A stretch of 64,000 bases of DNA from the NCBI RefSeq assembly GCF_947568905.1, contig NC_079172.1, positions 28,892,001 through 28,956,000 on the forward strand. The letters run 5' to 3'. The DNA comes from Ostrea edulis. Its lineage: Eukaryota. Below, piece by piece: positions 9,801 through 64,000 of the stretch (positions are counted from its first letter, which is position 1; every line of letters begins with the position of its first letter). The notes below the pieces were generated by a model. It was not told the DNA's origin. It did not search any database and saw only the letters and a list, made by a program, of their open reading frames with translations. The translations under genes and the position numbers were made by a program.

Positions 9801-10388
9801 TTCCCAAAATAAAACCTTCACAGATATAGGCATGTTATCTACATGTGAATAAAATTGAGAAATCATATCACTTTTGATACTATGTATTTCAAATATTGGA
9901 TACAAATTCTATTCATAACATAAAAAAGAAAAAAAAGATACAGTATTTCTCTAAAGGTTTAAAATTCTGAATTTTTAAGAAGCCCAAAAAACCCTTCACG
10001 AGAAAACAAATTTCTCATAGATGAAAAATTAGCAGTAGAATGAACATGAAAAAAACCAAACATGTATTGAATTTATGAATAAATGTATAAAAAAAAAAAA
10101 AAAAAAAAAGGGACCAGAAACCATCACAATTGGTAGCAAATTTAGACCTATATAGTTCATGGTGTGTCATGACCTTTACTCAGTGTCATGTATGTCTCAT
10201 GTCAAGGTTATGGCTGCAACACATTTCTCTAAATGAAATGTGTATGTGAACCTTAAATTTGCTGGGAGGGTACCTGACCAGCTTTTATCTAAAAAAAAAA
10301 AAAAATCCACCTCAAAATATGAAGTGAATTTTCTAACAACTCCAAGCTGGTAAAAGTTTAACCACAGAACAGAGAGAATGGAATTATT

Positions 10389-13300
10389 TCATCTTTTATG
10401 AGTATGTCCTTGATGTACAAGTTGCAGAACTTTGTCCTTGTCTGTGACCTTGACACTGAATTCTGGAGGACACAGAGCAGCTCCCATGGTGATGCCTTCT
10501 TTTCTGTACGACATCTTAGAATGAAGGGTTGCCCGTGCTGATCCGTGAAATTCCTTTGCTCCACATCCATCTAAAATTCTGTTCAGATTACCTGAATTTA
10601 TTCCTCCACCTGAAACATATGCAATGATAAATTTTTGAATCAAAAGTTTGAGGTAAAGGTCTTCAGCATTCTTTAGCCCGTCCACACAGGTTTTAAATAG
10701 ACATTCTGACTGGGATATACAGGGGGTTTCAGATGTGAATCGAAGATTAAACAACCTGTAAACCACATGATAAGGGGTCCGTGATTTCCCCTCACAGCCA
10801 GTATGATGGCGGAAAATCACCATTGGGCAAGAAGTACATGCATGGTTGTTCACAAAAAAATTGACCCTGTAAATTGTAATTTTATGAAATACCATGTTGT
10901 ATTGATTTTTTAATATAACTGTATGACAATACCTCAAACCACGGATATAAGCTCAAAATTCATCCTATCCATTTCAAGTTAATTAATGGAGTAAAGGCAC
11001 AAGTTTGTGATTTTGTTAAAATAAGCATATTACGGATTTCTAACAGACCTAGGCATAGTTCCAAAGAGTTTTTAATAATAATCAATTATCATTTAATCAG
11101 AAAATTTGGATTGGAGGTAAGCTTAGGTTGATGTGGACATGAAAATTGATTGCAAGTCTATCTAATGAAGTTTGAATAATTTGGGTGTAATGCTACAGAT
11201 AATGACATCAAATTACAGTTAATTAAGATACAGCTAATTAAGATATAGCTAATAAGAATGAGTGTCTTAATTACCTGGCATCACACATGTTCTATCACCC
11301 GCCTAAAAATGAATAAAACACTGTTATGACATGCTGTTGAAGCAATACATTTAGACTCACAAATAATCTAATTTAAAACTAACAAAACTGTCAAATAAGC
11401 ATGATATATAAACAAGCATGTGCATGAGATGAATTTACAATATATGATGTCACAAGCTGCCAGTCACCATTGAATTGTCAAATAACCTTACTTTTCAAAA
11501 CCTGTTGGTTTCAGAAAGTATGGAGCACATGCATTAATCATGATAAGATTCCATAGATATTAATCTTTATTTCGTAATGTTGCAAATACATGCAACTATT
11601 TATCATTGACACCTATGGTCCATGCTCTCCATCGGAATGTGATATTTTCGACAGCTTTCAAGAACCACCACCCCCTCCCAAAATCATAAATTTTGTGGCA
11701 ATCAAGGTATCTAATAACAACGTACTTGTACAGTAGATTTGGACATATTTATGAAAATAATTTTCTGCAACAAATAAAATTATTGGAGGAACTTAATTTT
11801 CACAAGTGCATAAATTGATATGAAAATAAAAGCCTCATCAATGAAATAATGCATCAAAACTTGACTATTTGATTCCTGTCAAAGAACAGGGGAAAACTGG
11901 TCAACTGACAAACATGACATACTCTTTCAACCATTTGTTGAATCATGGGTAATCCTTCCAAAGCTGAAGATGATCCACCACTTGTCAACACCCGTTGAAA
12001 TCCTAGATCCACCACATCATCTAGAGCCTGAAGAATGTCACTTGTCATATCTATAGCTAAAATGATTACTTAAATATATTGATACATACATTCTTTATAT
12101 AATTTTTAATATCTGATTGTCAGGCTTCACCTCAATATCTCGAACTCGATGGACCGAGAAAAAACTTCGAGATATCGATATCTGAGAATTTGAGGGAAAA
12201 ATACTTGAAGAATAAGTGGTTGGGGCTTCCAAATCACTCCGACATATCCATGGTATTCGGGATATCGGTATTCGAGATACCGAAGTTCACCTGTATAAGC
12301 CACATCAAATTCATTTCTTTCATCAAATCTAGGCCAGTTCTGGCATTCCTTCAAAGATTACAAACTACCTCAAAACAAAATCATTCTATTCTAATCTCTA
12401 CATTTAGAATTACTTAAATTCTATTCTAATCTGTACATTTAGAGTTACTTACCTCTGTGAAATGTTGCAGGAAGTGGCCTGATTAAGTCTACAAAATAAG
12501 TGAATAAATTCAGTGATAAGGTTGATCTATACACCACAACTTATACTAATATAAAACATCAATAATTTTGTGCACTTTTCATACATGCCAACTTTTGAAA
12601 ATCCCCATGGGGGATTTTGCGCGCGACGACCTTTTTTCAACGCTCAAAATTCACGACATTTTACCATGAAAATAAATATTTGTCTTTTCAAATAAAATAT
12701 CAATCTAATCATTATACATGTATCATACATTAACACAACACCAAGTGTGTTTGACCATTGACTTGAACAAAACTATAAAAAAAAAACACTTTGAAAGATA
12801 TACATAAGTATTTTAATAAAATTATCTATTCAGCAAAAAATCCTCTCCAACAAGTCACATACAAATATCAAATAATACTTAAAGTTGCATCCTTTTACAC
12901 CATATACACATTGGCTGGTCTATATATATCAAAATTTAAATTGAAGCACATGCATTTAGGTACGACTACACAGGCGATCTTGATTGTCTGTAAACAATTT
13001 CATGGGCTTGCAGAGTCTGGTGGAACAATCTGCATTGCAACCAGAAAAGGAGTAGTCTGCCCTGCTATGAAGTTTGCGAACAAAACCTTTGCACCCATGA
13101 CATCTGAAATAATTATCAGGAAAAAACACATCAAAATATACGTTTTTACTTGTAAATTAAAGCTACTTGCAAATATAAAATTCAGTACAGACTTGTGCGA
13201 ATTACGCATCACAGAGTCTATTGAATACTACACTATATAGACTATGTAATACATCGCTATAGACAGATAGATTCGGATAGCCTATATTATTATAGTTGGA

Positions 13301-16300
13301 AAAACATATATTTTACGTACCTTATTGCATATTTTGGATGCTGTCAGCGAGAGGCAAAAAATATCGGGAATGTCCGATTGTTTGGTGGTGCATGGTGACA
13401 CTATTATCGTTGTCATTCACGTATGTGTAAAGGATATGTCAATTTGAAATCCGTCCCGATTAATTACTATCAAAACATGCTTCGCACTGTCCAATAAGCA
13501 CCCCGACACAGGCAGACCAGGTAAATTACATCACCCCGATACCATGCGACACAGGTAAACAGCAATGGCTGACTATTGTCCCGATTTCTGATTGGCCAGT
13601 TCAGAAATGACGCGGGATTTCAAATTCCGGTTGGAAATGGGGATTTGTTGTCGTAAAATGGGAGGTATTTTTAGAAAATCGGGATTTCGGGGTATTTTTG
13701 CAATCCCGATCGGGATATCGGGATTTGCCTTTTCAACTGCTTCAAATCGGGAGAATCCCGCACAAATCGGGAAAGTTGGCATGTATGACTTTTATATTAC
13801 ATCCTAAAAAGACAGTTACCAAGGAATTTTGAACATAACTGCTTGTCAACTGTACCATCCCTGAAAAAAAGCAAACCATGTTAAATTCCTTTTCCTATAT
13901 TGTCAATAAATGGTATTTATCCAATCTTCTGATTTCAAATATTATGGTTAAGTATGTCTTAATTAAAGTGTTTTTATCTAGACTTCTAAAAGCAGTTGGA
14001 AAAAAAGTTAATGGTGCAGACACCAGGATACTTTATTTTAAAAAGGAATGACACGATGATATACAACATGAGCAAAGTGTTTATTGTTTTCATTATGTAG
14101 CATTGTTTTTCTGTGTCTTGATACTGTTGATTTCCCTGAGTGTGATCAAACTGCTGTGTTTTTCAGAATTCATATTACATATGTGCTATCCTTTGAAATT
14201 GGTGACATCTCAATACATAAGCCAAATGTTCTTGTGGAAATTGACTGACTCTGTCACAAACAAGATTGCATACACAAAATATAATTTCATTTAACTTCAT
14301 AGAGGAGTAATAACAAATTTTCCAATATTGCAGTAACTTGATCCAATCAGTCGGATTACCGGTACATCTTGTTGACAGCTTGTCCACTTTGATGTGATCA
14401 TTTTCATTTAATTAGACTCTTTGGATCAAATTGCTGTAGAAATATTAACTGTGTATTTACTATAAGTAGCTTAATTCATCATTACAGGATAACCTACTCA
14501 TTGAGGCAACCAAATACAAAGCCATCCGCCCCTGCTTCTTTTAGATCCACCAATTCTGATTTCATGACCTCAATTTCTTCTGAGCTGTACAGGAAGTCGC
14601 CTCCCCGAGGTCTTAGCATTACAAACACAGGGATTTTCACATACTTCTTTATGGTCTTTAACATTCCTGTAGTAGTAGATTTGTCACACACATATTATGC
14701 AGTTATTGACCAGATCTGAATGGAACAGGATCTTTAAATTGTACAAATATAACTTCATTTTCCTGGGAATTAGATAATCTATAATTATAGTTACAGTAAA
14801 ATAACTTGTATTTCATAAGATATCATTTCTACAATATTGTCTAGTAACATTTATCAGGGCAACATCATATTTTGCAAAAGCTCAGCTTATTTATCCATCC
14901 ATATATATATACCCTACACAAGAACCTTATATACTTGTCAAGGCAAAAAATCTAAATGAATAGTGATTTACAGTATGTCTGCCCAATAGCTGCGGCCATT
15001 AAGTCGAGCACTCACATTAGTTCTCAGTGTCCCATGTATTTGACCATTAAGCTGACTGACTAACATATATTGATTGATTGAATGTTGTTTAGCGTCCCTC
15101 TCGAAAATATTTCACTCATGTGGAGACATCACCATTGCCAGTGAAGGGCTGCAAAATTTAGGCCTATGCTCGGCGCTTATGGCCTTTGAGCTGGGAGAGA
15201 TCTTTATCGTTCCACAGCTACTGTGGCATGGGACCTCGGTTTTTGCGGTCTCATCTGAAGGACTGCCCCATTTAGTCGCCTCTTACGACAAGCAAGGGGT
15301 ACCTACTCTTACCCGGATCCCCACAGGGCATATATCTACTCCAGTTACACTAGTATATCCTAGTATATACCTAGTAACAAAACCCACAGACGGTTTGTTT
15401 GATGTCTTGTTGAGAATTTTTCACTCATATTGAGACATCACCAGTTGTAGGTGAAGTACCACAAATTTAGTAGACGTATACTTAGCGCTCAGTGCTGTAG
15501 CAGTGAAGGTTCTTTAAATCGCTAATGCCTGTCACGACACGGGACCTCCGTTTTTAAGGTTATATCTGAAAGACCCATGATTTTCACTTCTAAATGCTGA
15601 GTGTTTGGCGAAGGAGCAATCACTACCTATGTTTACTTCTTAAAGTTTGATGTGGCCATGGCACAGGTGGGGCTCGGGAGGAGCGGGGCTCAGGAGGGTT
15701 ACAAGTAGAGTATCTATGTAAGGTTTACTGGTGTTGGAAGAGTGTAATATGGGAAAATTCTACTGTTAGCTCAATTCATAAAGCACCTGCATGATTTAAT
15801 GTGGTCTCGAGCTCCAGTTTCGGAGTCTGACTGCATGACCTTTTTCACTTCCAGTTTCTTCATATACATGTATTTACGTTTCCAATGTTTTTGCCTTCAT
15901 CTCTACAAATTGTGATGATAGCCATTTTTTCATGCATCCACTGAAGTCGTAAACAATTGGATGGAAGAATATATAGACTGGGGAGTCTGACAGAAATGAA
16001 AGTAGAATGTAAATTATTAACTATAATTTTTGAAAATACATGAAGGTATGAACTGCAAGACTTCACCCCAGCATACTTTTCATAAAGCGCTAACATGCTT
16101 CTTAAAGTATATGTCAGTACAGAAGCACAGCTGCATGCAGTTCATACACTATTATACCTCTGACATGTATTTTCAAAACTAAAATAAACTTCTTAACTAA
16201 AATTCCAAGTCCAATTAATCAATTGATTAGTTAGCTAATATACTGCTTCATTGTTATATTCTGATCAATATTGATGATATTTTACAATGTGTGTATTATC

Positions 16301-54873: not shown

Positions 54874-56422
54874 TTACAGTGCATAATGGCTGTATTGTGA
54901 GTAACCCGGATCAAGATCATCCAAATCATCCTCATCCAGATGCTGATCCAAGTCAGGATTTACAGAATCATCATATCCAATATCATCCAGATCAACTGGT
55001 TTTAATGACGGTTTGGACAATTCCAAATACATGTGGCAAAGCAAACTCACTCTCTCTGCAGGGGAATTGCTCACAGCGTGAGCATCAAATATTGTAACTG
55101 TATCAACAAACACTTTCTTCACCAAATCATGGTCAAAGTTGACAATTGAAAGACAGTTAAGAATTTCATATGGATCAAAGTTGCTTTCTATAAGGAATTT
55201 CACATTCGAAGTCACCTTTTCGGGGTCTTTTGATAAATATCTGTAGGTAAATCTTCTTCCTTCTTGAACATGTTTTTTGGGAATCCTAAGATAATTAGCT
55301 AACTGTAAACTGCTTACAAACCGATCTCTGGATTTTTCTACCAAAGGAACTATTTCTTCATACCCCAAGTTTGTGTTCTCGCACATTTCTGATAACACTT
55401 GCACAAATGTGTCAATATATTTTATTCGGAAAATACGAGGATCTGCTAAGGCAATTTCATGATACTTAAATCCGAACTTGAACAATATGTGAATTACTTC
55501 CCGCGCAGTTTTCAAGTGGTGATATAAATCATGTTTCTTACACAACATCACCAACAACTCATCCACCTCACGCTCATCATTGTCCATATCATCTTCCTCA
55601 CCAACAGAAAATTCCTTTAAACTTTTGTCCAATTTTTCCAACTTTTGAATTAGCTTTTCTTTGCTGACCTTAGCAACCATTCTTGCAATCCTGACATTAG
55701 ATTGAAATTGATACTGCTTGACCATGTCCAGTTTCTCAACATGATCCTTGTACTTCCGTGCCTTGGAAAAAGTCTGATGCACTTCTTCAACGAATGGCTC
55801 ATGACCGTAAACTTCATCAATTTTCTTCTCTAACTCCTCCCGCTGAATATTTTCCGAGAACTCCCTGATGGCGAGCCTTTCATCTTTGTCCCACTGACCC
55901 CCAACAGGGTGATGAGACTCATTCACAAACAAAAGCAGGGAGGGGCATATGTAGATCTTTTTGGAAACTTCTTTCAGTCTTTGGATGAAGAACTCCATTT
56001 TTTTTTGGTCCCAGTCCAACACTTGGTCCTGCTGTCTGTCTGTGTGAAGCTGGTACCCATTTTCCTCCAACAACTTCAGGTTTTTGTGTTGAATCTGTTT
56101 TTAACAGAAGGAAGAACACTAATTTCATAAGACATTTATTTTCTGAAAGTCAAGTCCATTTAATGCATTAAAGAAAGTTTAAATGACCAATACACTCTTC
56201 CTGAGTTGTCTAACAGTCGTCTCCCTTTGTCATATACTAACTGCAAACCACAACGAAATACACCATCTAGATAATGTTTCAATGTACACTTTTCAGGTGA
56301 CATGAATATCTTACCTTCTGGTGAAAAGTCCCCGTTTCTGTTGAGACTCCTCTTCTACACACTAGACAGAGTTGTCTGCTCTTGAGAACATGTCTGCTGA
56401 CGAATAGAGCTAAAGACTGCAT
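54874..56422 (-). CDS. Putative mitochondrial mTERF-like protein (442 aa)
   Basis: Exons 56422-56315 and 56094-54874 (phase 0, GT-AG). The N-terminus MQSLALFVSRHVLKSRQLCLVCRRGVS is Arg/Leu/Ser-rich and acid-free, like a presequence. Segments such as REVIHILFKFGFKYHEIALADPRIF and DPEKVTSNVKFLIESNFDPYEILNCLSIVNF resemble mTERF repeats. The ATG is directly preceded by an acceptor (tttttcacag), implying a non-coding first exon. The family call is from memory. Confidence 0.6.
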
Positions 56423-57598
56423 CTGTGAAAAATGCAATTCACAGGTACTTAGTGAGTCATATTGATAACATAAAAATGTATCATCATTTCATAAAAACAT
56501 ATCCAAAGGGTTTGCATGGGGCAAGTTTCATTTGAAAAGTTAGGCTTTCTAGAGAACACAATCTCGGAGCTCCACCCTGGAACCCCATTTCCAGAGCCCA
56601 ATATTTAATTCCTAATCACTGGCCTGATGACACTGAGAAATTGGCTAAGTAATGACATCTGTTATATATTTTGGTTTTAAATCTAGCAACTGATCTCAAA
56701 GGAGAGAGGGACAGATAATTTAATCATGCATGTAACAATTAAGTTAATGACGCAAGTCCAAAACTGACAACCATGGTCCTCCTTTTGAAATTACTGAATG
56801 TTGCTATATATATATTCTTGCACTTTTAATTTTTACTATACATTTCACAGAAAACCAAAAAATTATAATGTTCTTTAATATATTTTTTTTAAAACAATGA
56901 AAACAATCTTATTCACACAACAAAAATTATATTTTTTAATAGGCGGACCATTACATTTACGGTAATACAGCATGGAAGATACAGAGGATTAAAAGTTCTA
57001 TATGCTCTTCACATACCAGAATTGGTCATTACAAATACATAATCACCAAATACCAAAGCCCCCCCCCCCCCCCCCCCACTTCTATTTAGGCTATGTCTGT
57101 CCACTTCTCTAAAGAGAATACCCACCACCACCATAACAACATCTGGCCTGGAGACGCAGGCTTCAATCATTGAAGTTAAAATAGTTTGTCAAACTAAAAA
57201 AAAATGCATGGTCTGAAGGGAAAATGAAAACAAAATTCTATCCTAAACTGGTTCGGCATCATGGTAATCGGAGAACCAGTTTATAAAGCATACTAAAAAA
57301 AACCTTTATTTGCAAATCTGTGAATTCCGGATTGAATATATCGATCTAAAACAAAATGCACTTCTTACAGATTTTAGTAGTCTTTTTGTATCATCAATTG
57401 AAAATTTTAAACTTGAATTATTGTAAATATAGCATTTTCTGTTTATCGTGGTCATTTCTATTCCTGTAGCTGTTATCTGAACCTAAATGAGGACATGACT
57501 ATAGTACAAATATTAGACGTTGCACTCATCCGTCTGTGTTACACACATCCTTCTCTGACTGTCGCAGTATTCAGTGTAGGAAAACAGAAAACACTAAG

Positions 57599-58120
57599 AT
57601 GCGGGAAATAATTCACGTCCAGGTGGGACAATGCGGAAACCAAATAGGTTCCAAATTTTGGGAGGAGATTTCCCTTGAACATGGAATTAGTACCGAAGGA
57701 AAATTCACCGGAGATAACGATGTACAGCTGGAGCGGATCAACGTGTTCTTCACTGAAGGTCAGGGTGGATCCTATGTCCCACGGGCGTGTATGGTGGACC
57801 TCGAACCTGGCACCATGGATTCAATCCGAGGCGGGCCCTATGGGTCAATTTTCAGACCAGACAATTTTGTTTTTGGACAAAACGGAGCTGGTAACGTATG
57901 GGCGAAAGGCCACTACACCGAGGGCGCCGAACTTGTGGAGGAAGTCTTGGACGTCATACGGAGGGAATCGGAAAACTGTGACTGTCTCCAAGGCTTCCAA
58001 CTTACCCACTCCATTGGCGGAGGAACGGGCTCCGGAATGGGGACGCTTCTTCTTAGCAAGATTAAGGAGGAATTCCCCGACCGCATCATGTGTTCATACT
58101 CCGTCCACCCCTCACCCAAA
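57599..58120 (+). CDS. TUBB: Beta-tubulin alternative first exon A (codons 1-174)
   Basis: [17 protein letters not shown]...GGGTGSG...PSPK, 522 nt, intact, followed by the strong donor gtaagt (phase 0). No matching 3' exon occurs before exon B. Confidence 0.9.
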
Positions 58121-59908
58121 GTAAGTTGTAACAGTCTTTAAAATGGGATTCAGGTATATTTTTTGTGTAGATAGACTATTCCAAACTCTAATTAAAACTT
58201 TCAATTTTATGGAGAGGTACGTGCATATCTTATATATAACGTCCGATTAAAGATGCAATTGATAAGGATATTATGAAGTTACAGTCCTTTGAGTTGACTA
58301 CAATTTTTCGATAAATATGTATGTATTTACATTTCCAGTGTATCTTTACAAATTGTACTGATAGCATTTTCCTCATGAATACGTTGCAGTTGTAAACGAT
58401 TCGCGTATGAATCCTGATAAATATAGTACGTCTATTTTCGGCTGGAAATGAGAGAGAGAGAGGGGGGGGGGGCAAAAAAATGACATTTTAAAGAATATGT
58501 AAATATAAAAAAATGAATTTCGTTTCACATCGACATGCTTTTTATGAAGCGAATCATGAAGTAAGTCTGCGTGAAGCGTCGAAATTCATACCATAATGTG
58601 TCGAAATTCATACCATAATGTATTTTCACAATTGAAATTTATTTCATCAGTACTGTACATATAATCTTCACCAAAAAATCTGATAATCTATCTTGGGATC
58701 TCAGATTGAGGGTTCCCCAATTCACTTTAATCCGGATCATTCCGGCGTTTGTGCAACTACTCAAAAAAGAAGAAAAAGTTAGATGGCGGCAAACTAGAAC
58801 GAAAATATGTGTCTGATGAAAAGTCATGCGTTCCTTGTATGAAATCTAAACATTGATACTTTGTCAGAGGGAAGTAGAAATATTTTATTTAATCTATACT
58901 AGGGTCAATCTCAGGTGCCCAAGTTAAAATGAAAGTTGTGCTGGAATGGGTCTAGTAAAATCTTTTTCGGAGGAAAAATGTTCTAAATACTGAATGGGGA
59001 GGGGGGGGGGTCAGTTGAAAAATGTATGTTTAAACTTTCTAGAGTTCGCTTCAAAGTAGTTTCTATGGGTACAAGTATTGCCCTTTTGAACTAACCAATC
59101 AATGATCTTGTTAAGCCTCACTTTGAGTTCAGAAACGAGGCGTCCAGACGTATCGTGTGGACGGGGGAAACGATGCAGGTTCCACACTACTTTCAAACGT
59201 TTGAAATGATCCAGAAGAGAAATTGAAACGAAGTTCCACACATGCATGTAATCACGACTCAAGAGCAGATCTATCTAAAACATGAATTACGGATGTGCTC
59301 GTATCCGTGAAACAGACCCAGACGCCTCGACAGGATATATAGATGCATGTATATATATGCCCCCTGAGGGCCCTTGATTGGTGAATAAATAAATATTATT
59401 ATATTATATATACAAGTTGACTATCTAGTGTGAAGCACAGTTTTGAGATTGATTTCGGCAGGACAGTGATAAACTCGCACCTACATCAAAACCCACAACT
59501 GATCAGTTTCCAAATTAGTTGACACAATGTCTATTGATCACATGCCTACTTCAAAGGCTTTAGTCTACCCATGCTGCAGCACAAGCAATTTGCTCATATT
59601 CATGATATATATGATAAACCACCCCTTACATCAGTAGATTTAACCGTTGCCTCGGAAAAGGTTCGGACAAGAGTTTATACCAAGAAACAATGTGTAGTAT
59701 AAAAAGTTGCACAGGAAATAAAGTATTAGGAGTAAAATCAATGCTCCCAAGTTGCAAAATTTGTACACAGCTGTGGAAAAAAAATGTTTGGTAGTGACAC
59801 CTGGTATAGCCCGTTGTTTTGTATTTTATTGATGCATATTGATGTAAGTAATGTAACCTGTAGCTGGTCAAGTATTCACGCAGTTGACTCAGTCTGACGC
59901 AGCCAACG

Positions 59909-60430
59909 ATGAGGGAAATTGTTCACGTTCAGGCAGGGCAGTGTGGGAACCAGATAGGGGCCAAATTCTGGGAGTTAATTTCCGAGGAGCATGGGATTGA
60001 TAACACCAGTGCGTATGTTGGGAACTCCCCTCAACAGCTGGAGAGAATAGATGTGTATTATAACGAGGCTGCCCACGGGAAGTATGTCCCACGGGCTGTG
60101 CTGGTGGACCTGGAGCCGGGCACCATGGACTCTGTCCGTAGCGGACCCAATGGCGCCCTCTTCCGGCCAGATAATTTCGTGTTCGGTCAGAACGGGGCAG
60201 GAAATAATTGGGCCAAAGGTCATTACACCGAAGGCGCGGAGCTGGTAGACGAAATAATGGACGTTATCCGACAGGAAGCGGAAAACTGCGACTGTTTGCA
60301 GGGGTTTCAGTTGGCCCACTCTATTGGTGGGGGTACAGGGTCAGGGCTGGGGACTCTTGTCACGGGAAAAGTTCGTGAGGAGTATCCCGATCGGATCATG
60401 ACCTCATTCTCTGTAGTCCCCTCACCTAAG
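59909..60430 (+). CDS. TUBB: Beta-tubulin alternative first exon B (codons 1-174)
   Basis: [17 protein letters not shown]...GGGTGSG...PSPK, 522 nt, donor gtctgt (phase 0). Confidence 0.95.
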
Positions 60431-61607
60431 GTCTGTTTTGCTAAAATTCGATCAATTTGTTTCATTTGTTTTGTGCTGTACAGTAACTAATTTTCGTTGG
60501 GTAAAAATATTCGCGAGTTTTGAAGAAAAAAATCTCCTAATGGACTCGATTTTGTGGTGGTAGACTTATGGACTTGATTTTGTGGTGGTAGACATGTGGA
60601 CTTGATTTTGTAGTGGTAGACCTGCTTGTGGAGACTTTGAATTAATGGGTATGTCCATCACAAAAAGAGAGGAATAATGACCGCAAAAATAGATATTACA
60701 CATTATTAGCATATTTGCGGTTCGCTTCCTACAGTTATGCTTTCAAATGGGGATAAGGATTTTGTATAAGGAAGTTGGTGTTGCGTAAGGGGTGTGGGTG
60801 TAAATTACGAATGATTAGAGCTTTTTCATTCACTGTACTGTCATGTTGTGAAATTAAAAAAAATTTACAACATCAGATTTGTATGTATCTAAACTGACAA
60901 TGACAGTTCTTTCGTAATGTTAATCACCATGACGGAGATTTCGTCTTCATTCAATATGTTCCTTACTAATTTACCTGTATTCTGTCTATATCATCTCATC
61001 GCAACATAAAGTTCTAATAAGCTTATGCTATATTTCATCACAACTTATGGTATTAACATTAAATAAGGCGATGACTGACACGCACGGAGACTTGTCTCAT
61101 CACGGGAGATTTTCAGTGATAATACCGATAACTGTAATTTGTTTATATGTAGATCAATATTGACTCATCAGTCAGCGTTTTGCGTGAATGTGCTATAATT
61201 TGATCTGATAAAGCAACGTGAAGTTACGATAACCTGTCGATATGTTACTCATCGGTTCGTGTTCGATTAAACTTGCACGTCACCTCGTTCCTAGCTGTAC
61301 CTTTTATCTGCTGGTATCAGTTTGTTCATGCATACAGCGAATATTTGATAACTAAATTAAGATATTAAAATTCTAAATTAAATGTTTTTCATAAAGATGT
61401 TTAAACAATTGCTGGAAAACTCTGTATTTGACTCTAAATATCCCCTTCATCTTGTCATGAAAGTGCATCCGTGTGTCCGAGTACTGTTGGCGATTTAAAG
61501 TTCAGGAGGTGCTATACATCGTCATAATAGCTGACTTCCTTTTAAAACATGAATGAAAATATAAATATTAGCAATATGTGTCTATTCATTTAGAATATTA
61601 TTGCCTA

Positions 61608-61680
61608 GCTGTGTAGTTCAGTAGGTTGGCACGACAACTTCTGAATAATACGCTCATAGATCGCGGGTTCGAGTCTAGCA
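61608..61680 (+). mobile_element. tRNA-derived SINE head / pseudo-tRNA fragment
   Basis: A-box-like tagttcagtagg and B-box gggttcgagtc. I could not build a full cloverleaf. Confidence 0.45.
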
Positions 61681-62005
61681 GTTTTGTTTTTTTTTAAAAA
61701 TCAGATCGCTTTCTACTAAAACTGCATTTTTTTTTTTTTTTTGACTAAATAATCTAGATTTGAAAGTTTTCAATATCAAAATATTGTTTAACATATTGTT
61801 CACTTTTCATCCATTGACTTAATCATAACCAAAATATAAAAAAAAAAACCCACTTTCCTTCAAAAGATGTTTTTAATGAGAACTTTTATCATCGAATAGT
61901 TTTTTCTTCTTGATCATGTGTAGAACATTAATCGTAACTTCACTGTATACAGTGTATAAATATATGTACAGTGACCATTTATGATTATAAATATTTATTT
62001 TGCAG

Positions 62006-62818
62006 GTTTCTGAGGTGATTGTTGAACCTTATAACGCCGTGCTCTCAGTTCATCAGCTGCTTGAGAATACAGATGAAACCTTCTGTATCGATAACGAGGC
62101 TCTTTACGACATTTGTTTCCGGAGCTTAAAACTTCCTAGTCCGAGCTATGGCGATCTCAACCACCTCGTATCGCGTACCATGTCCGGGGTCACGACCTGT
62201 CTACGGTTTCCCGGACAACTGAACGCTGATCTGAGAAAGTTAGCTGTAAACATGGTGCCGTTCCCGCGTCTTCACTTCTTCATGCCTGGCTTCGCTCCTC
62301 TGACGTCACGAAATGCCGAGCAATTCAGAGCACTCACCGTTCCACAACTTATTCAAGAAATATTTGATGGCCGGAACATGATGACCGCGTGTGACCCCCG
62401 TCGTGGTCGCTTCCTGACCGTCGGGACATTCTTCAGGGGGCAGATGTCCATGAAGGAAGTTGAGGAACAAATGATGAATACCCAAAATAAACTGTCCAAC
62501 AACTTTGTGGAGTGGATCCCAAACAACCTTAAAACTGCGGTATGTGACGTTCCACCCCGGGACGTGAAAATGTCTGCCACTTTTGTCGGCAACAGCACGG
62601 CCATACAAGAACTGTTCATCCGCATAGGCGACCAATTTACCGCCATGTTCCGTCGCCGGGCTTTCTTACATTGGTACACGGGCGAAGGCATGGACGAAAT
62701 GGAATTCACTGAAGCAGAATCTAATATGAAAGACTTAATTTCTGAGTACCAACAGTATGAGAGCATGGGCCTGGACGACGGCTTTGACGAGGAGGAAGAG
62801 CAGGAGGAAGCAGCGTGA
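62006..62818 (+). CDS. TUBB: Beta-tubulin shared 3' exon (codons 175-444)
   Basis: Acceptor ttattttgcag, then [10 protein letters not shown]...[16 protein letters not shown]...[15 protein letters not shown]...[10 protein letters not shown] and TGA. Confidence 0.97.
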
Positions 62819-63251
62819 ACGCGTTAATGGTGGAAACCAAGGCGACAATGTCGACACTTTTACACATTAATTTTCCATTATACATACAATATTTATTTAT
62901 AATTTTTGTATTTTACTGTAGCCTTAATATTTGGACTCTACAAATTAAATACTAAATACAGCATAACTGTGAACATAACTCTACATTAAAGTGTCATTTT
63001 CATGTATATTTTTTCGGGTGTTTTCAGATATCGACACTCGCAGTTCAGGGAAGCATCGGAGTGAAGGGATTTCACACTCTTTTGGGGGTTCCAAATGTTT
63101 TGCCAAAACGTTATTTGTAATACTTGATTTCTCTCTTTTAGGAGGTAAAGTCTCTCTCTAGGATGAAATCTCCATTCTATTTATAGGTTGAAATCCCCAT
63201 TCTATTAATAGGTCGAAATCCCCATTCTTTTTATAGGTAGAAGCACTCGTA

Positions 63252-63437
63252 CTATATTTACTTGATCAAGATATAGGGCTCACGGCGGGTGTGACTGGTC
63301 GACAGGGGATGCTTACTCCTCCTAGGTACCTGATCCCACCCCTGGTGTGTCCAGGGGTCTGTGTTTGCCCAACTTTCTATTTTGTATTGCTTATGGGATT
63401 TATGAGATTGATCACTGTTCGTTATCTTCACCTTTCA
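63252..63437. mobile_element. High-copy bivalve interspersed repeat fragment
   Basis: tagggctcacggcgggtgtgactggtcgacaggggatgcttactcctcctagg...gttatcttcacctttcat, recognised as a common oyster repeat; class not determined. Confidence 0.5.
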
Positions 63438-63604
63438 TTTAGTTAGTATCAGGATCCTAAAAGGAGGGTATCCAACACATATATCCCTCCGCAACTCTTT
63501 TAAGGGAAGATGATTTGTATGATGTGTTGATTTTCTTGACACCTATCGTTCAAATAAACTATATTCTCCCTACAAACCTGCTAATGAGTCAACGTGGTGC
63601 AACA

Positions 63605-63775
63605 TCTAAGGAGGATTTCTTAGGTTTCCGATATCGATGACAATATAATTGGGTGGATTTGTGATATCGATGTGGATGTAATTGAGTAGATTTGCGATAT
63701 CGATGCAAATATAATTGGGTGGATTTGCGATATCGATGTGGATGTAATTGAGAAGATTTGCGATATTGATGTGGT
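63605..63775. repeat. Short dimeric tandem repeat
   Basis: gatttgcgatatcgatg recurs with alternating tails tggatgtaattgag and (a/c)aatataattgggtg. Confidence 0.8.
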
Positions 63776-64000
63776 ATAAAGATATGAAAACAATCATAGT
63801 ATGGTGAATCCAGGGAAAGTGTTACACCTAAACTATTTCAGCGTATTCGATGAAAGTTGTTTGTAGATATGAGCTGATTGATTTTTCATACGTGTTGTGT
63901 ATCAGTCAATTCCTGCCTTTTATTTTATAAGATGACGATAATTTGCACTAAAAATTCTCAAAGAAAACTCGGGAAGATGTATGTCGTTAGCTGAGTTAAA

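What the first reader, a model, noticed from the sequence alone, without database searches (positions are those of the whole stretch)
57599..62818. One beta-tubulin gene with two alternative N-terminal halves spliced to one shared C-terminal half
Seen in the sequence: two complete 522-nt exons, each starting at ATG-MREI and ending at K174 with a phase-0 GT donor, precede a single exon for V175 to the stop. The 1.8 kb between A and B contains no tubulin 3' exon. A and B differ at 48 of 174 residues by my count (72% identity) plus many silent sites, yet both lack stops and frameshifts and keep GGGTGSG and MREI. Both share the non-canonical N95 and I139, suggesting they arose by duplication of one exon. 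Established: animal tubulin isotypes normally come from separate genes; the variable-first-exon plus constant-exon layout is known from protocadherin and UGT1 loci. Inference: alternative promoters make two isotypes with different GTP-binding and lateral-contact domains but an identical C-terminal half and tail.
Basis: partly seen in the sequence, partly recalled or inferred. Interest (0 to 1): 0.92.

Follow-up and report, generated by a model that had tools for sequence, protein, structure and literature searches.

The report
Oyster beta-tubulin with two alternative first exons
This flat-oyster beta-tubulin gene has two different, separately promoted first exons (each coding residues 1-174) that share one second exon, so one gene very probably makes two tubulins that differ only in the GTP-binding half; this layout is conserved in three oyster genera and seen in spliced Pacific-oyster mRNAs.

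Summary
Exon A (57599-58120) and exon B (59909-60430) are each an intact 522-nt ATG-to-K174 reading frame ending at a phase-0 GT. They are 72% identical in protein. One exon C (62006-62818) codes V175 to the stop, and the 64-kb window holds no other tubulin piece.

The window is Ostrea edulis. Its RefSeq annotation models only B+C, and calls A a separate 180-aa gene.

The same A-B-C layout lies in syntenic loci of Saccostrea echinata and Magallana gigas. RefSeq already lists A+C and B+C as isoforms X1 and X2 in those two species and in C. angulata. In M. gigas, intron-free RNA contigs join A to C and B to C. Each has its own 5' leader contiguous with the genome, which indicates alternative first exons with separate promoters.

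Exon A is under strong purifying selection (dN/dS about 0.02, including on the O. edulis branch), so it is not a relic. Trees pair A with C as the ancestral gene, matching a scallop gene with one 5' exon. The origin of B is unresolved.

I could not test the A-to-C junction in O. edulis RNA. The nearest published precedent is the Drosophila betaTub97EF mutually exclusive exon pair. I rate this a new variant of a known kind, of moderate to high interest.

The parts
57485..57598 (+). Conserved upstream block and 5' leader of exon 1A. It contains GTTATCTG (57472-57479, just outside the blastn block), AATGAGGACA (57486-57495) and ATTAGACGTTGCACTCATCC (57512-57531).
   Evidence: This block aligns with the regions upstream of the S. 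echinata and M. gigas A exons although synonymous sites are saturated. In M. gigas, two A+C mRNA contigs start at the equivalent position and are contiguous with the genome. A promoter or leader role is inferred.
57599..58120 (+). Alternative first coding exon 1A (M1-K174), followed by the donor AAA|GTAAGT.
   Evidence: Intact ORF with a 169-bit Tubulin domain match. It is 92% identical in protein to the A exons of S. echinata and M. gigas. dN/dS is 0.016-0.032, and about 0.02 on the O. edulis branch. The donor is identical in the three genera. The orthologous exon is spliced to C in M. gigas mRNAs.
58121..62005 (+). Intron removed from A-initiated transcripts (3885 nt). It contains the whole exon 1B unit.
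   Evidence: Inferred from the orthologous junction 10522|13552 in the M. gigas A+C contigs. The A-B part holds no tubulin 3' exon relic.
59824..59908 (+). Conserved upstream block and leader of exon 1B. It contains TTTTATTGATGCATATTGATGTAAGTAA (59824-59851) and AACCTGTAGCTGG (59855-59867).
   Evidence: Nearly invariant in the three genera. In M. gigas, the 5' ends of the B+C mRNA contigs lie in or just after the equivalent block. The AG inside it is not conserved, so it is not a 3' splice site. A promoter role is inferred.
59909..60430 (+). Alternative first coding exon 1B (M1-K174), followed by the donor AAG|GTCTGT.
   Evidence: Intact ORF with a 177-bit Tubulin domain match. Together with exon C it equals the RefSeq protein XP_048745300.2. 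It is 89-91% identical to the B exons of the other two genera, with dN/dS 0.03-0.04.
60431..62005 (+). Intron removed from B-initiated transcripts (1575 nt).
   Evidence: Taken from the RefSeq B+C model and from the orthologous junction 12035|13552 in M. gigas mRNAs.
61190..61268 (+). Conserved non-coding element inside the shared intron. It has GATA-like sites and an ACTCATC motif that also occurs in the block upstream of exon A.
   Evidence: blastn and MAFFT show conservation in all three genera, and the motif positions come. Rfam finds no match. Its function is unknown; an enhancer is a guess.
62006..62818 (+). Shared exon 2 (V175-A444 plus the stop), preceded by the acceptor ttttgcag. The 3' UTR continues downstream.
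   Evidence: It matches Tubulin_C, is 88-93% identical to the C exons of the other genera, and is the only such exon in the window. Genomic resequencing contigs are colinear with it.

Best explanation
The locus is a single beta-tubulin gene of Ostrea edulis with two alternative first exons and one shared second exon.

Transcription from a promoter upstream of exon 1A gives a pre-mRNA whose strong GTAAGT donor is joined to the only acceptor, at exon 2. Exon 1B has no 3' splice site, so it is removed as part of that 3.9-kb intron. Transcription from a second promoter inside that intron, just upstream of exon 1B, gives a pre-mRNA in which 1B is joined to the same exon 2. The choice of isoform is therefore made by promoter use, and mutual exclusion follows automatically.

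The products are two 444-aa beta-tubulins. Their residues 175-444 are identical, covering the M-loop, the H11/H12 surface and the acidic tail. They differ at 48 of the first 174 residues. The differences cluster in the H1-S2 loop (residues 31-58), in residues 76-84 and 147-170, and include N100V in the T3 nucleotide-sensing loop. The likely consequence is a difference in lateral lattice contacts and GTP-dependent dynamics, not in the tail code.

What is shown: the layout itself; its conservation and synteny in three genera; purifying selection on A, B and C; and both spliced mRNAs with separate leaders in M. gigas.

What is inferred: that O. edulis uses both exons, the exact transcription start sites, and any functional difference between the two proteins.

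On history, A+C is the older pairing. It is orthologous to a scallop gene with one 5' exon and the same intron position. B was added before the Ostrea, Saccostrea and Magallana lineages split.
For: - **Anatomy:** coordinates, frames and splice sites are as described.
- **Saccostrea echinata (locus L001):** A-type exon at 10001-10522, B-type at 11681-12202 and C at 13088-13909. These are 92%, 91% and 92% identical in protein to the window's exons.
- **Magallana gigas (locus L021):** A at 10001-10522, B at 11514-12035 and C from 13552.
- **Synteny:** the upstream minus-strand gene is conserved in both other species.
- **RefSeq:** it names A+C as isoform X1 and B+C as isoform X2 in M. gigas, C. 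angulata and S. echinata.
- **A+C RNA contigs in M. gigas:** L016-L020 map to 9733/9871..10524, then 13552..14587, then 14953 onward.
- **B+C RNA contigs in M. gigas:** L022-L027 map to 11310/11452..12038, then 13550..14587, then 14953 onward. Introns are removed precisely and each leader is contiguous with the genome.
- **Abundance:** the exact A+C ORF occurs in 154 collection blocks and the B+C ORF in 65.
- **Selection:** dN/dS is 0.016-0.032 for exon A, 0.032-0.041 for B and 0.017-0.025 for C. The O. edulis branch of A is about 0.02.
- **Fixed differences:** 22 A/B differences are fixed in all three genera.
- **Splice sites:** donor sequences are conserved across the genera.
- **Non-coding conservation:** blocks upstream of A and of B are conserved although synonymous sites are saturated.
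- **Population data:** the A-exon translation is identical in 19 O. edulis resequencing contigs.
- **Contrast with a real relic:** just downstream of the window a decayed tubulin exon is only 36-39% identical to its relatives.
- **Phylogeny:** A groups with the S. echinata neighbour gene and scallops (100/100, then 96/88). C does the same (100/100, then 96/91).
- **Scallop:** its nearest gene has one 5' exon and the same phase-0 intron after codon 174.
Against: - No O. edulis transcript was available. The collection holds no assembled O. edulis mRNA for either isoform: the RefSeq B+C protein is found on the chromosome only, and all O. edulis Logan contigs fetched are genomic.
- O. edulis RefSeq models exon A as a separate 180-aa product that reads into the intron.
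- Transcription start sites are not mapped. One longer M. gigas contig for each isoform extends further upstream (A+C from 9733, B+C from 11310), and the B one could come from unspliced A pre-mRNA.
- dS is close to saturation, so the dN/dS values are approximate.
- No functional data exist for either isoform.
Confidence: 0.85

Rival explanations
1. In O. edulis specifically, exon A is no longer joined to exon C. It is either an orphaned relic or a stand-alone gene for a truncated 180-aa product, as the RefSeq annotation has it, and only B+C is a working tubulin.
For: RefSeq O. edulis has a separate 180-aa model (exon A plus six intron-coded residues) and a single 444-aa B+C protein. I could not retrieve any O. 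edulis transcript showing the A-to-C junction.
Against: On the O. edulis branch, exon A has dN 0.016 against dS about 0.7 (ratio about 0.02), which is as constrained as exon B. The GTAAGT donor and the upstream block are conserved. The protein is identical in 19 resequencing data sets. A genuine tubulin relic 2.2 kb downstream of the gene has decayed to 36-39% identity. From established knowledge of the fold, 174 residues are less than the tubulin GTPase domain (Pfam match positions 1-151 of 190) and would not be expected to fold alone. Older C. gigas RefSeq releases had the same kind of split model before X1/X2 replaced it.
Confidence: 0.08
2. The layout is an assembly artefact: two tandem complete genes were collapsed, and the 3' exon that belongs after A was lost.
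For: Tandem tubulin paralogs are common, and S. echinata has a second complete tubulin gene 2.5 kb downstream.
Against: Three independent chromosome-scale assemblies of three genera show the same A-B-C order with no 3' exon between A and B. O. edulis short-read contigs from many samples are colinear with the window around both A and C. M. gigas mRNAs join A directly to the same C exon that B uses.
Confidence: 0.01
3. A and B are mutually exclusive internal exons chosen by the splicing machinery from one promoter and a shared upstream leader, as in Drosophila betaTub97EF, and not promoter-linked first exons.
For: The two exons have equal length and the same phase, and a conserved element lies in the shared intron. 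One M. gigas B+C contig extends 204 nt upstream of the B start codon, so a more distant start site is not formally excluded.
Against: In M. gigas every A+C and B+C contig has a leader contiguous with the genome directly upstream of its own ATG exon, and none carries a shared upstream exon. No conserved AG acceptor precedes B. Each exon carries its own start codon and its own conserved upstream block.
Confidence: 0.05

Closest known systems
Drosophila betaTub97EF mutually exclusive exons 4B/4C (Findeisen et al. 2014, PMC4202323; Myachina et al. 2017, bioRxiv 10.1101/185827)
   Same: One beta-tubulin gene makes two core-sequence isoforms from two paralogous exons of equal length and phase. The exons are about 77% identical, against 72% here. 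The arrangement is conserved across a clade, and both isoforms share the C-terminal tail.
   Different: The fly exons are internal. They cover about 40 residues with 13 differences and are chosen by splicing from one promoter. The oyster exons are first exons with their own ATG and upstream region, cover 174 residues (39% of the protein) with 48 differences, and are chosen by promoter use.
Genes with variable first exons and constant downstream exons (clustered protocadherins, UGT1A)
   Same: Tandem paralogous first exons each have their own start codon, promoter and donor, and are spliced to shared downstream exon(s). Unused downstream first exons lack an acceptor and are removed with the intron. 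This rests on my own knowledge of those loci, not on a test made here.
   Different: Here there are only two variable exons. The variable part is half of a single compact globular fold and not a separate extracellular or substrate-binding domain. Nothing suggests stochastic choice.
RefSeq isoform pairs in sister oysters: M. gigas XP_065924735.1 / XP_034328834.2, C. angulata XP_052703523.1 / XP_052703524.1, S. echinata XP_061177807.1 / XP_061177808.1
   Same: These are the orthologous gene with the same A+C (X1) and B+C (X2) products.
   Different: They are automated models without description or analysis. In O. edulis the same pipeline produced B+C plus a separate 180-aa A-only model.
Scallop two-exon beta-tubulin (Mizuhopecten yessoensis P0199, Argopecten irradians P0200)
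   Same: This is the nearest relative outside oysters for both the A half (79-81% identity) and the C half in trees, and it has the identical phase-0 intron after codon 174.
   Different: It has a single 5' exon and no B-type exon in the 2-kb intron or within 10 kb on either side.

Membership tests
Beta-tubulin | Tubulin/FtsZ GTPase domain followed by the Tubulin C-terminal domain | tested here: met
   PF00091 scores 169 bits on A and 177 bits on B. PF03953 scores 132 bits on C.
Beta-tubulin | Closest solved structures are beta-tubulin chains, aligned without gaps | tested here: met
   Exon A aligns over residues 1-174 to residues 1-174 of beta-tubulin chains such as 6tiu_B, with E = 2.5e-93.
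Beta-tubulin | MREI N-terminus and the GGGTGSG nucleotide-binding signature | tested here: met
   Both motifs are present in both A and B.
Beta-tubulin | Assembles with alpha-tubulin into microtubules | not testable with these tools
   This needs biochemistry or localisation experiments.
Alternative-first-exon gene (variable first exons, constant downstream exon) | Two or more paralogous first exons, each with its own start codon and 5' splice site, upstream of one shared acceptor | tested here: met
   Shown in the window and conserved in S. echinata and M. gigas.
Alternative-first-exon gene (variable first exons, constant downstream exon) | Transcripts join each first exon directly to the shared exon | tested here: inconclusive
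   Met in the M. gigas ortholog, where contigs L016-L020 carry A|C and L022-L027 carry B|C. No O. edulis transcript was available.
Alternative-first-exon gene (variable first exons, constant downstream exon) | Each first exon has its own promoter and transcription start | tested here: inconclusive
   M. gigas has separate leaders contiguous with the genome, and conserved blocks lie upstream of each exon. No start-site mapping such as CAGE exists.
Mutually exclusive spliced exon cluster (betaTub97EF type) | The alternative exons are internal, each flanked by an acceptor and a donor, downstream of a common first exon | tested here: not met
   Both exons begin with their own 5' leader and ATG. 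No conserved acceptor precedes B, and no shared upstream exon occurs in any mRNA contig.

The most novel reading that the evidence does not exclude
The gene is an evolutionary chimera. The ancestral oyster gene was A+C, as in scallops. A first exon with its own promoter, taken from a different and more canonical beta-tubulin paralog (B), landed in its intron. This could work at once because both genes share the phase-0 intron after codon 174. Oysters have since kept a natural 'domain-swap' pair, in which two different nucleotide-binding and lateral-contact halves are tested against one M-loop, motor-binding surface and tail. If the two promoters are tissue-specific or temperature-specific, lattice properties could be tuned without changing the tail code.
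Probability: 0.35. Interest if true: 0.75.

Novelty: new variant of a known kind. Interest (0 to 1): 0.62.

Why it matters
Tubulin isotypes are almost always encoded by separate genes. The field's main unsolved question is which parts of the protein make isotypes functionally different. Here evolution has kept two isoforms for a long time, since before three oyster genera split. They are identical in the C-terminal half and tail and differ only in the N-terminal 174 residues. This is a ready-made experiment separating effects of the core (GTP-binding and lateral-contact half) from effects of the tail.

It is also, as far as my searches show, only the second case of beta-tubulin core diversity made from alternative exons, and the first made through alternative promoters. 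On the practical side, it corrects the O. edulis annotation, where exon A is listed as a separate 180-aa gene. It also shows that A+C, not B+C, is the ancestral form.

Tried and rejected
1. **O. edulis transcripts.** The Logan contigs that carry exon C (L006-L015) and exon A (L030-L036) are all colinear with the genome, introns included. They come from the same resequencing run series, so they say nothing about splicing.
2. **Exact look-up of the spliced O. edulis A+C protein.** I left this out because the 444-aa string has no single reference and long sequences may not be typed in. It did not appear as its own cluster in three homology searches. It could be hidden among the 21 unlisted members of the A+C cluster.
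3. **Relic of a lost 3' exon between A and B.** Only noise was found in all three species.
4. **Exon-duplication origin.** The AU test firmly rejects a clade of A and B alone (p = 4e-6). That test is unfair, because the S. echinata neighbour gene nests within A. With the neighbour included p = 0.051, and with scallops also included p = 0.032, so the question stays open. The rare informative sites are split: N95 links A, B and the neighbour, while I5 and Q55 link A with scallops.
5. **P0005, a B-type exon with an A-type 3' end.** This is most likely a k=31 assembly chimera at a 35-nt stretch that is identical in M. gigas A and B. It is probably not a real third isoform.
6. **Structured RNA.** ARAGORN and Rfam found nothing in 57000-64000.
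7. **Earlier scan notes.** None exist for this place or for the word 'tubulin'.
8. **Literature.** Searches for an oyster or bivalve description, or for the RefSeq accessions, found nothing.
Full report
**1. The observation**

- Exon A is 57599-58120 and exon B is 59909-60430. Each is a 522-nt open frame from ATG (MREI) to K174.
- Exon A is followed by AAA|GTAAGT and exon B by AAG|GTCTGT.
- Exon C is 62006-62818. It follows ttttgcag|G in phase 0 and codes V175 to A444 plus the stop.
- A and B are identical at 126 of 174 residues and at 67% of nucleotides. Synonymous sites are saturated (pS 0.81) while dN is 0.21.
- Pfam finds the Tubulin GTPase domain in A (169 bits) and B (177 bits), and Tubulin_C in C.
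- tblastn with all three pieces finds nothing else tubulin-like in the 64-kb window.
- A deliberately permissive search of the A-B interval finds no decayed 3' exon in this or two other species.

**2. Whose gene this is and how it is annotated**

A search with exon C, followed by a cluster look-up, identifies the window as Ostrea edulis.
- RefSeq XP_048745300.2 (444 aa) is exactly B+C.
- Exon A is annotated as a separate 180-aa product: the 174 exon residues plus six residues read from the intron.

**3. The same layout in other oysters**

- In Saccostrea echinata (L001), an A-type exon, a B-type exon and one C exon lie in the same order. They are 92%, 91% and 92% identical in protein to the window's exons.
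- In Magallana gigas (L021) the same three exons are present.
- The gene on the minus strand upstream of exon A is conserved in both species, so the loci are syntenic.
- RefSeq lists A+C as isoform X1 and B+C as isoform X2 in M. gigas, C. angulata and S. echinata.
- Three independent assemblies, plus O. edulis short-read contigs from many samples that are colinear with the window around A and around C, rule out an assembly collapse.

**4. RNA evidence**

For M. gigas the collection holds many short, intron-free contigs with an uninterrupted 447-codon ORF.
- Mapped to the genome, the A+C contigs (L016-L020) cover 9733/9871..10524, then 13552..14587, then 14953 onward.
- The B+C contigs (L022-L027) cover 11310/11452..12038, then 13550..14587, then 14953 onward.
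- The introns are removed exactly at the GT and AG sites, so these contigs derive from spliced mRNA.
- Each isoform has a 5' leader contiguous with the genome directly upstream of its own ATG exon, and none has a shared upstream exon.
- The B leader lies inside the intron of the A transcription unit.
- The exact A+C ORF is on record in 154 blocks of the collection and the B+C ORF in 65.
- Two further contigs from a related Crassostrea-type sample also carry A joined to C.

This is the pattern of alternative first exons driven by separate promoters. Exon B has no conserved AG acceptor in front of it. A transcript started at A can therefore only splice A to C, and B is lost with the intron. No special mechanism for mutual exclusion is needed.

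I found no O. edulis transcript of either isoform. Even the RefSeq B+C protein is recorded on the chromosome only. For O. edulis the A-to-C junction therefore remains an inference from orthology.

**5. Selection**

| Exon | dN/dS between orthologs |
|---|---|
| A | 0.016-0.032 |
| B | 0.032-0.041 |
| C | 0.017-0.025 |

- A three-point estimate for the O. edulis branch of exon A gives dN 0.016, dS about 0.7 and a ratio of about 0.02. This is the same as for exon B.
- dS is near saturation, so these numbers are rough. The contrast is still plain: about 8% protein change against 63-74% of synonymous sites changed.
- The A donor GTAAGT is identical in the three genera.
- The A-exon protein is identical in 19 O. 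edulis resequencing data sets.
- A genuine tubulin relic lies about 2.2 kb beyond the gene's stop, outside the window. It has decayed to 36-39% identity with its relatives. That is what an abandoned exon looks like at this locus.

**6. Regulatory sequence**

Although synonymous sites are saturated, three non-coding blocks are conserved among the three genera.
- About 110 nt upstream of exon A (57485-57598).
- About 85-115 nt upstream of exon B (59793/59824-59908), including a nearly invariant 28-mer with a doubled ATTGATG.
- An 80-nt element in the shared intron (61190-61268).
- The 5' ends of the M. gigas mRNA contigs fall at or just after the first two blocks.
- I read those two blocks as promoter or leader sequence. 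That is an inference.

**7. What differs between the two proteins**

- Of the 48 differences in O. edulis, 22 are fixed between all A and all B copies of the three genera. Nine of these lie in residues 31-60 and six in residues 147-174.
- By the standard beta-tubulin structure (established knowledge; exon A aligns without gaps to solved chains), these regions are the H1-S2 loop and the H4-S5 region.
- A also has V100 where B and canonical tubulins have N100, in the T3 loop that contacts the nucleotide's gamma-phosphate.
- Residues 175-444 are shared. They include the M-loop, helices H11/H12 and the acidic tail.
- My inference is that the isoforms differ in lateral lattice bonding and GTP-linked dynamics, and not in the surface and tail read by motors, MAPs and modifying enzymes.

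**8. History**

- The nearest gene outside oysters, in the scallop Mizuhopecten, has one 5' exon and the same phase-0 intron after codon 174.
- In a tree of N-terminal halves, A groups with the first exon of a tandem neighbour gene of S. echinata (100/100) and then with scallops (96/88). B forms its own clade (100/100) among canonical beta-tubulins.
- In a tree of C-terminal halves, exon C groups with the same neighbour (100/100) and the same scallops (96/91).
- A and C therefore share a history. A+C is the ancestral gene and B is the addition, which is the reverse of what the O. edulis annotation suggests.
- It is unresolved whether B arose as a copy of A that then diverged, or came from another paralog.
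- The AU test for a clade of A, B and the neighbour gives p = 0.051, and with scallops p = 0.032.
- The only clean shared derived site (N95) favours a common origin, while two sites (I5, Q55) link A to scallops.

**9. Comparison with what is known**

- Findeisen et al. [quoted passage not shown] They then reported one case: two mutually exclusive internal exons in Drosophila betaTub97EF, 77% identical and conserved in Diptera.
- Myachina et al. (bioRxiv 10.1101/185827) showed that the two fly isoforms differ at 13 positions in 40 residues and behave differently when over-expressed.
- The oyster case resembles this in outcome but differs in mechanism (first exons and promoters, not internal exons) and in extent (174 residues, 48 differences).
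- My literature searches found no description of the oyster locus or of its RefSeq accessions.

**10. Verdict**

- The finding is real and its core interpretation is supported.
- It is not wholly new, since automated RefSeq models already encode both isoforms in three sister species. It appears undescribed in the literature, and it is missing from the annotation of the species in the window.
- I rate it a new variant of a known kind, with interest 0.62. I put confidence 0.85 on O. edulis using both first exons as M. gigas does.

Noticed in passing
window 61190-61268: An 80-nt non-coding element in the shared intron is conserved in O. edulis, S. echinata and M. gigas. It carries GATA-like sites and the motif ACTCATC(C), which also sits about 75 nt upstream of the exon A start codon in all three species. 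It may be an enhancer sharing factors with promoter A.
   Followed up: partly
L037 15128-15343 (O. edulis chromosome, about 2.2 kb past the gene's stop, outside the window): There is a decayed remnant of a tubulin first exon (36-39% identity, E about 1e-4). In S. echinata the same position holds an intact second tubulin gene with an A-like first exon (L001 16409-18591, P0198). M. gigas has nothing within 10 kb.
   Followed up: partly
L004, L005 (protein P0005) and L021 exons A and B: Two M. gigas RNA contigs code a B-type exon whose last 30 or so residues are A-type. M. gigas A and B share a 35-nt identical stretch exactly at the switch point, against 14 nt in the other two species. The contigs are probably k-mer assembly chimeras, and the identical tract hints at a small gene conversion in the Magallana lineage.
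   Followed up: partly
L021 14588-14952: M. gigas mRNAs of both isoforms have an intron removed from the 3' UTR about 215 nt after the stop codon. Such a position often marks a transcript for nonsense-mediated decay.
   Followed up: no
window 57487-57495 and 59842-59847: Upstream ATGs are conserved in both leader blocks. Before exon A there is ATG-AGG-ACA (MRT...). Before exon B there is a start-stop pair (ATG-TAA here, ATG-TAG in M. gigas). Whether they lie inside the mRNAs depends on the unmapped start sites.
   Followed up: partly
window 61600-61680: This stretch looks tRNA-derived by eye (GTTCGAGTC-type T-arm) and is followed by T and A runs, as in a SINE head. ARAGORN and Rfam report nothing.
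   Followed up: partly
window 54874-56073 (minus strand): A 399-codon open frame belongs to a gene annotated as 457 aa, with no Pfam hit on record. It is conserved in the same position and orientation upstream of the tubulin gene in S. echinata (62% identity) and M. gigas (about 50%).
   Followed up: partly
window 60540-60625, 58575-58625 and 63600-63770: Short tandem or direct repeats lie in the B-C intron, in the A-B interval and downstream of the gene. They were seen by eye only.
   Followed up: no
Proteins P0004 (XP_019923855.1) and P0143 (XP_034328383.1): Older C. gigas RefSeq models of this locus were wrong in different ways. One is a 386-aa protein joining unrelated upstream sequence to exon C. 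The other is a 174-aa frameshifted A-only product. This shows that the locus is hard for automatic annotation.
   Followed up: no
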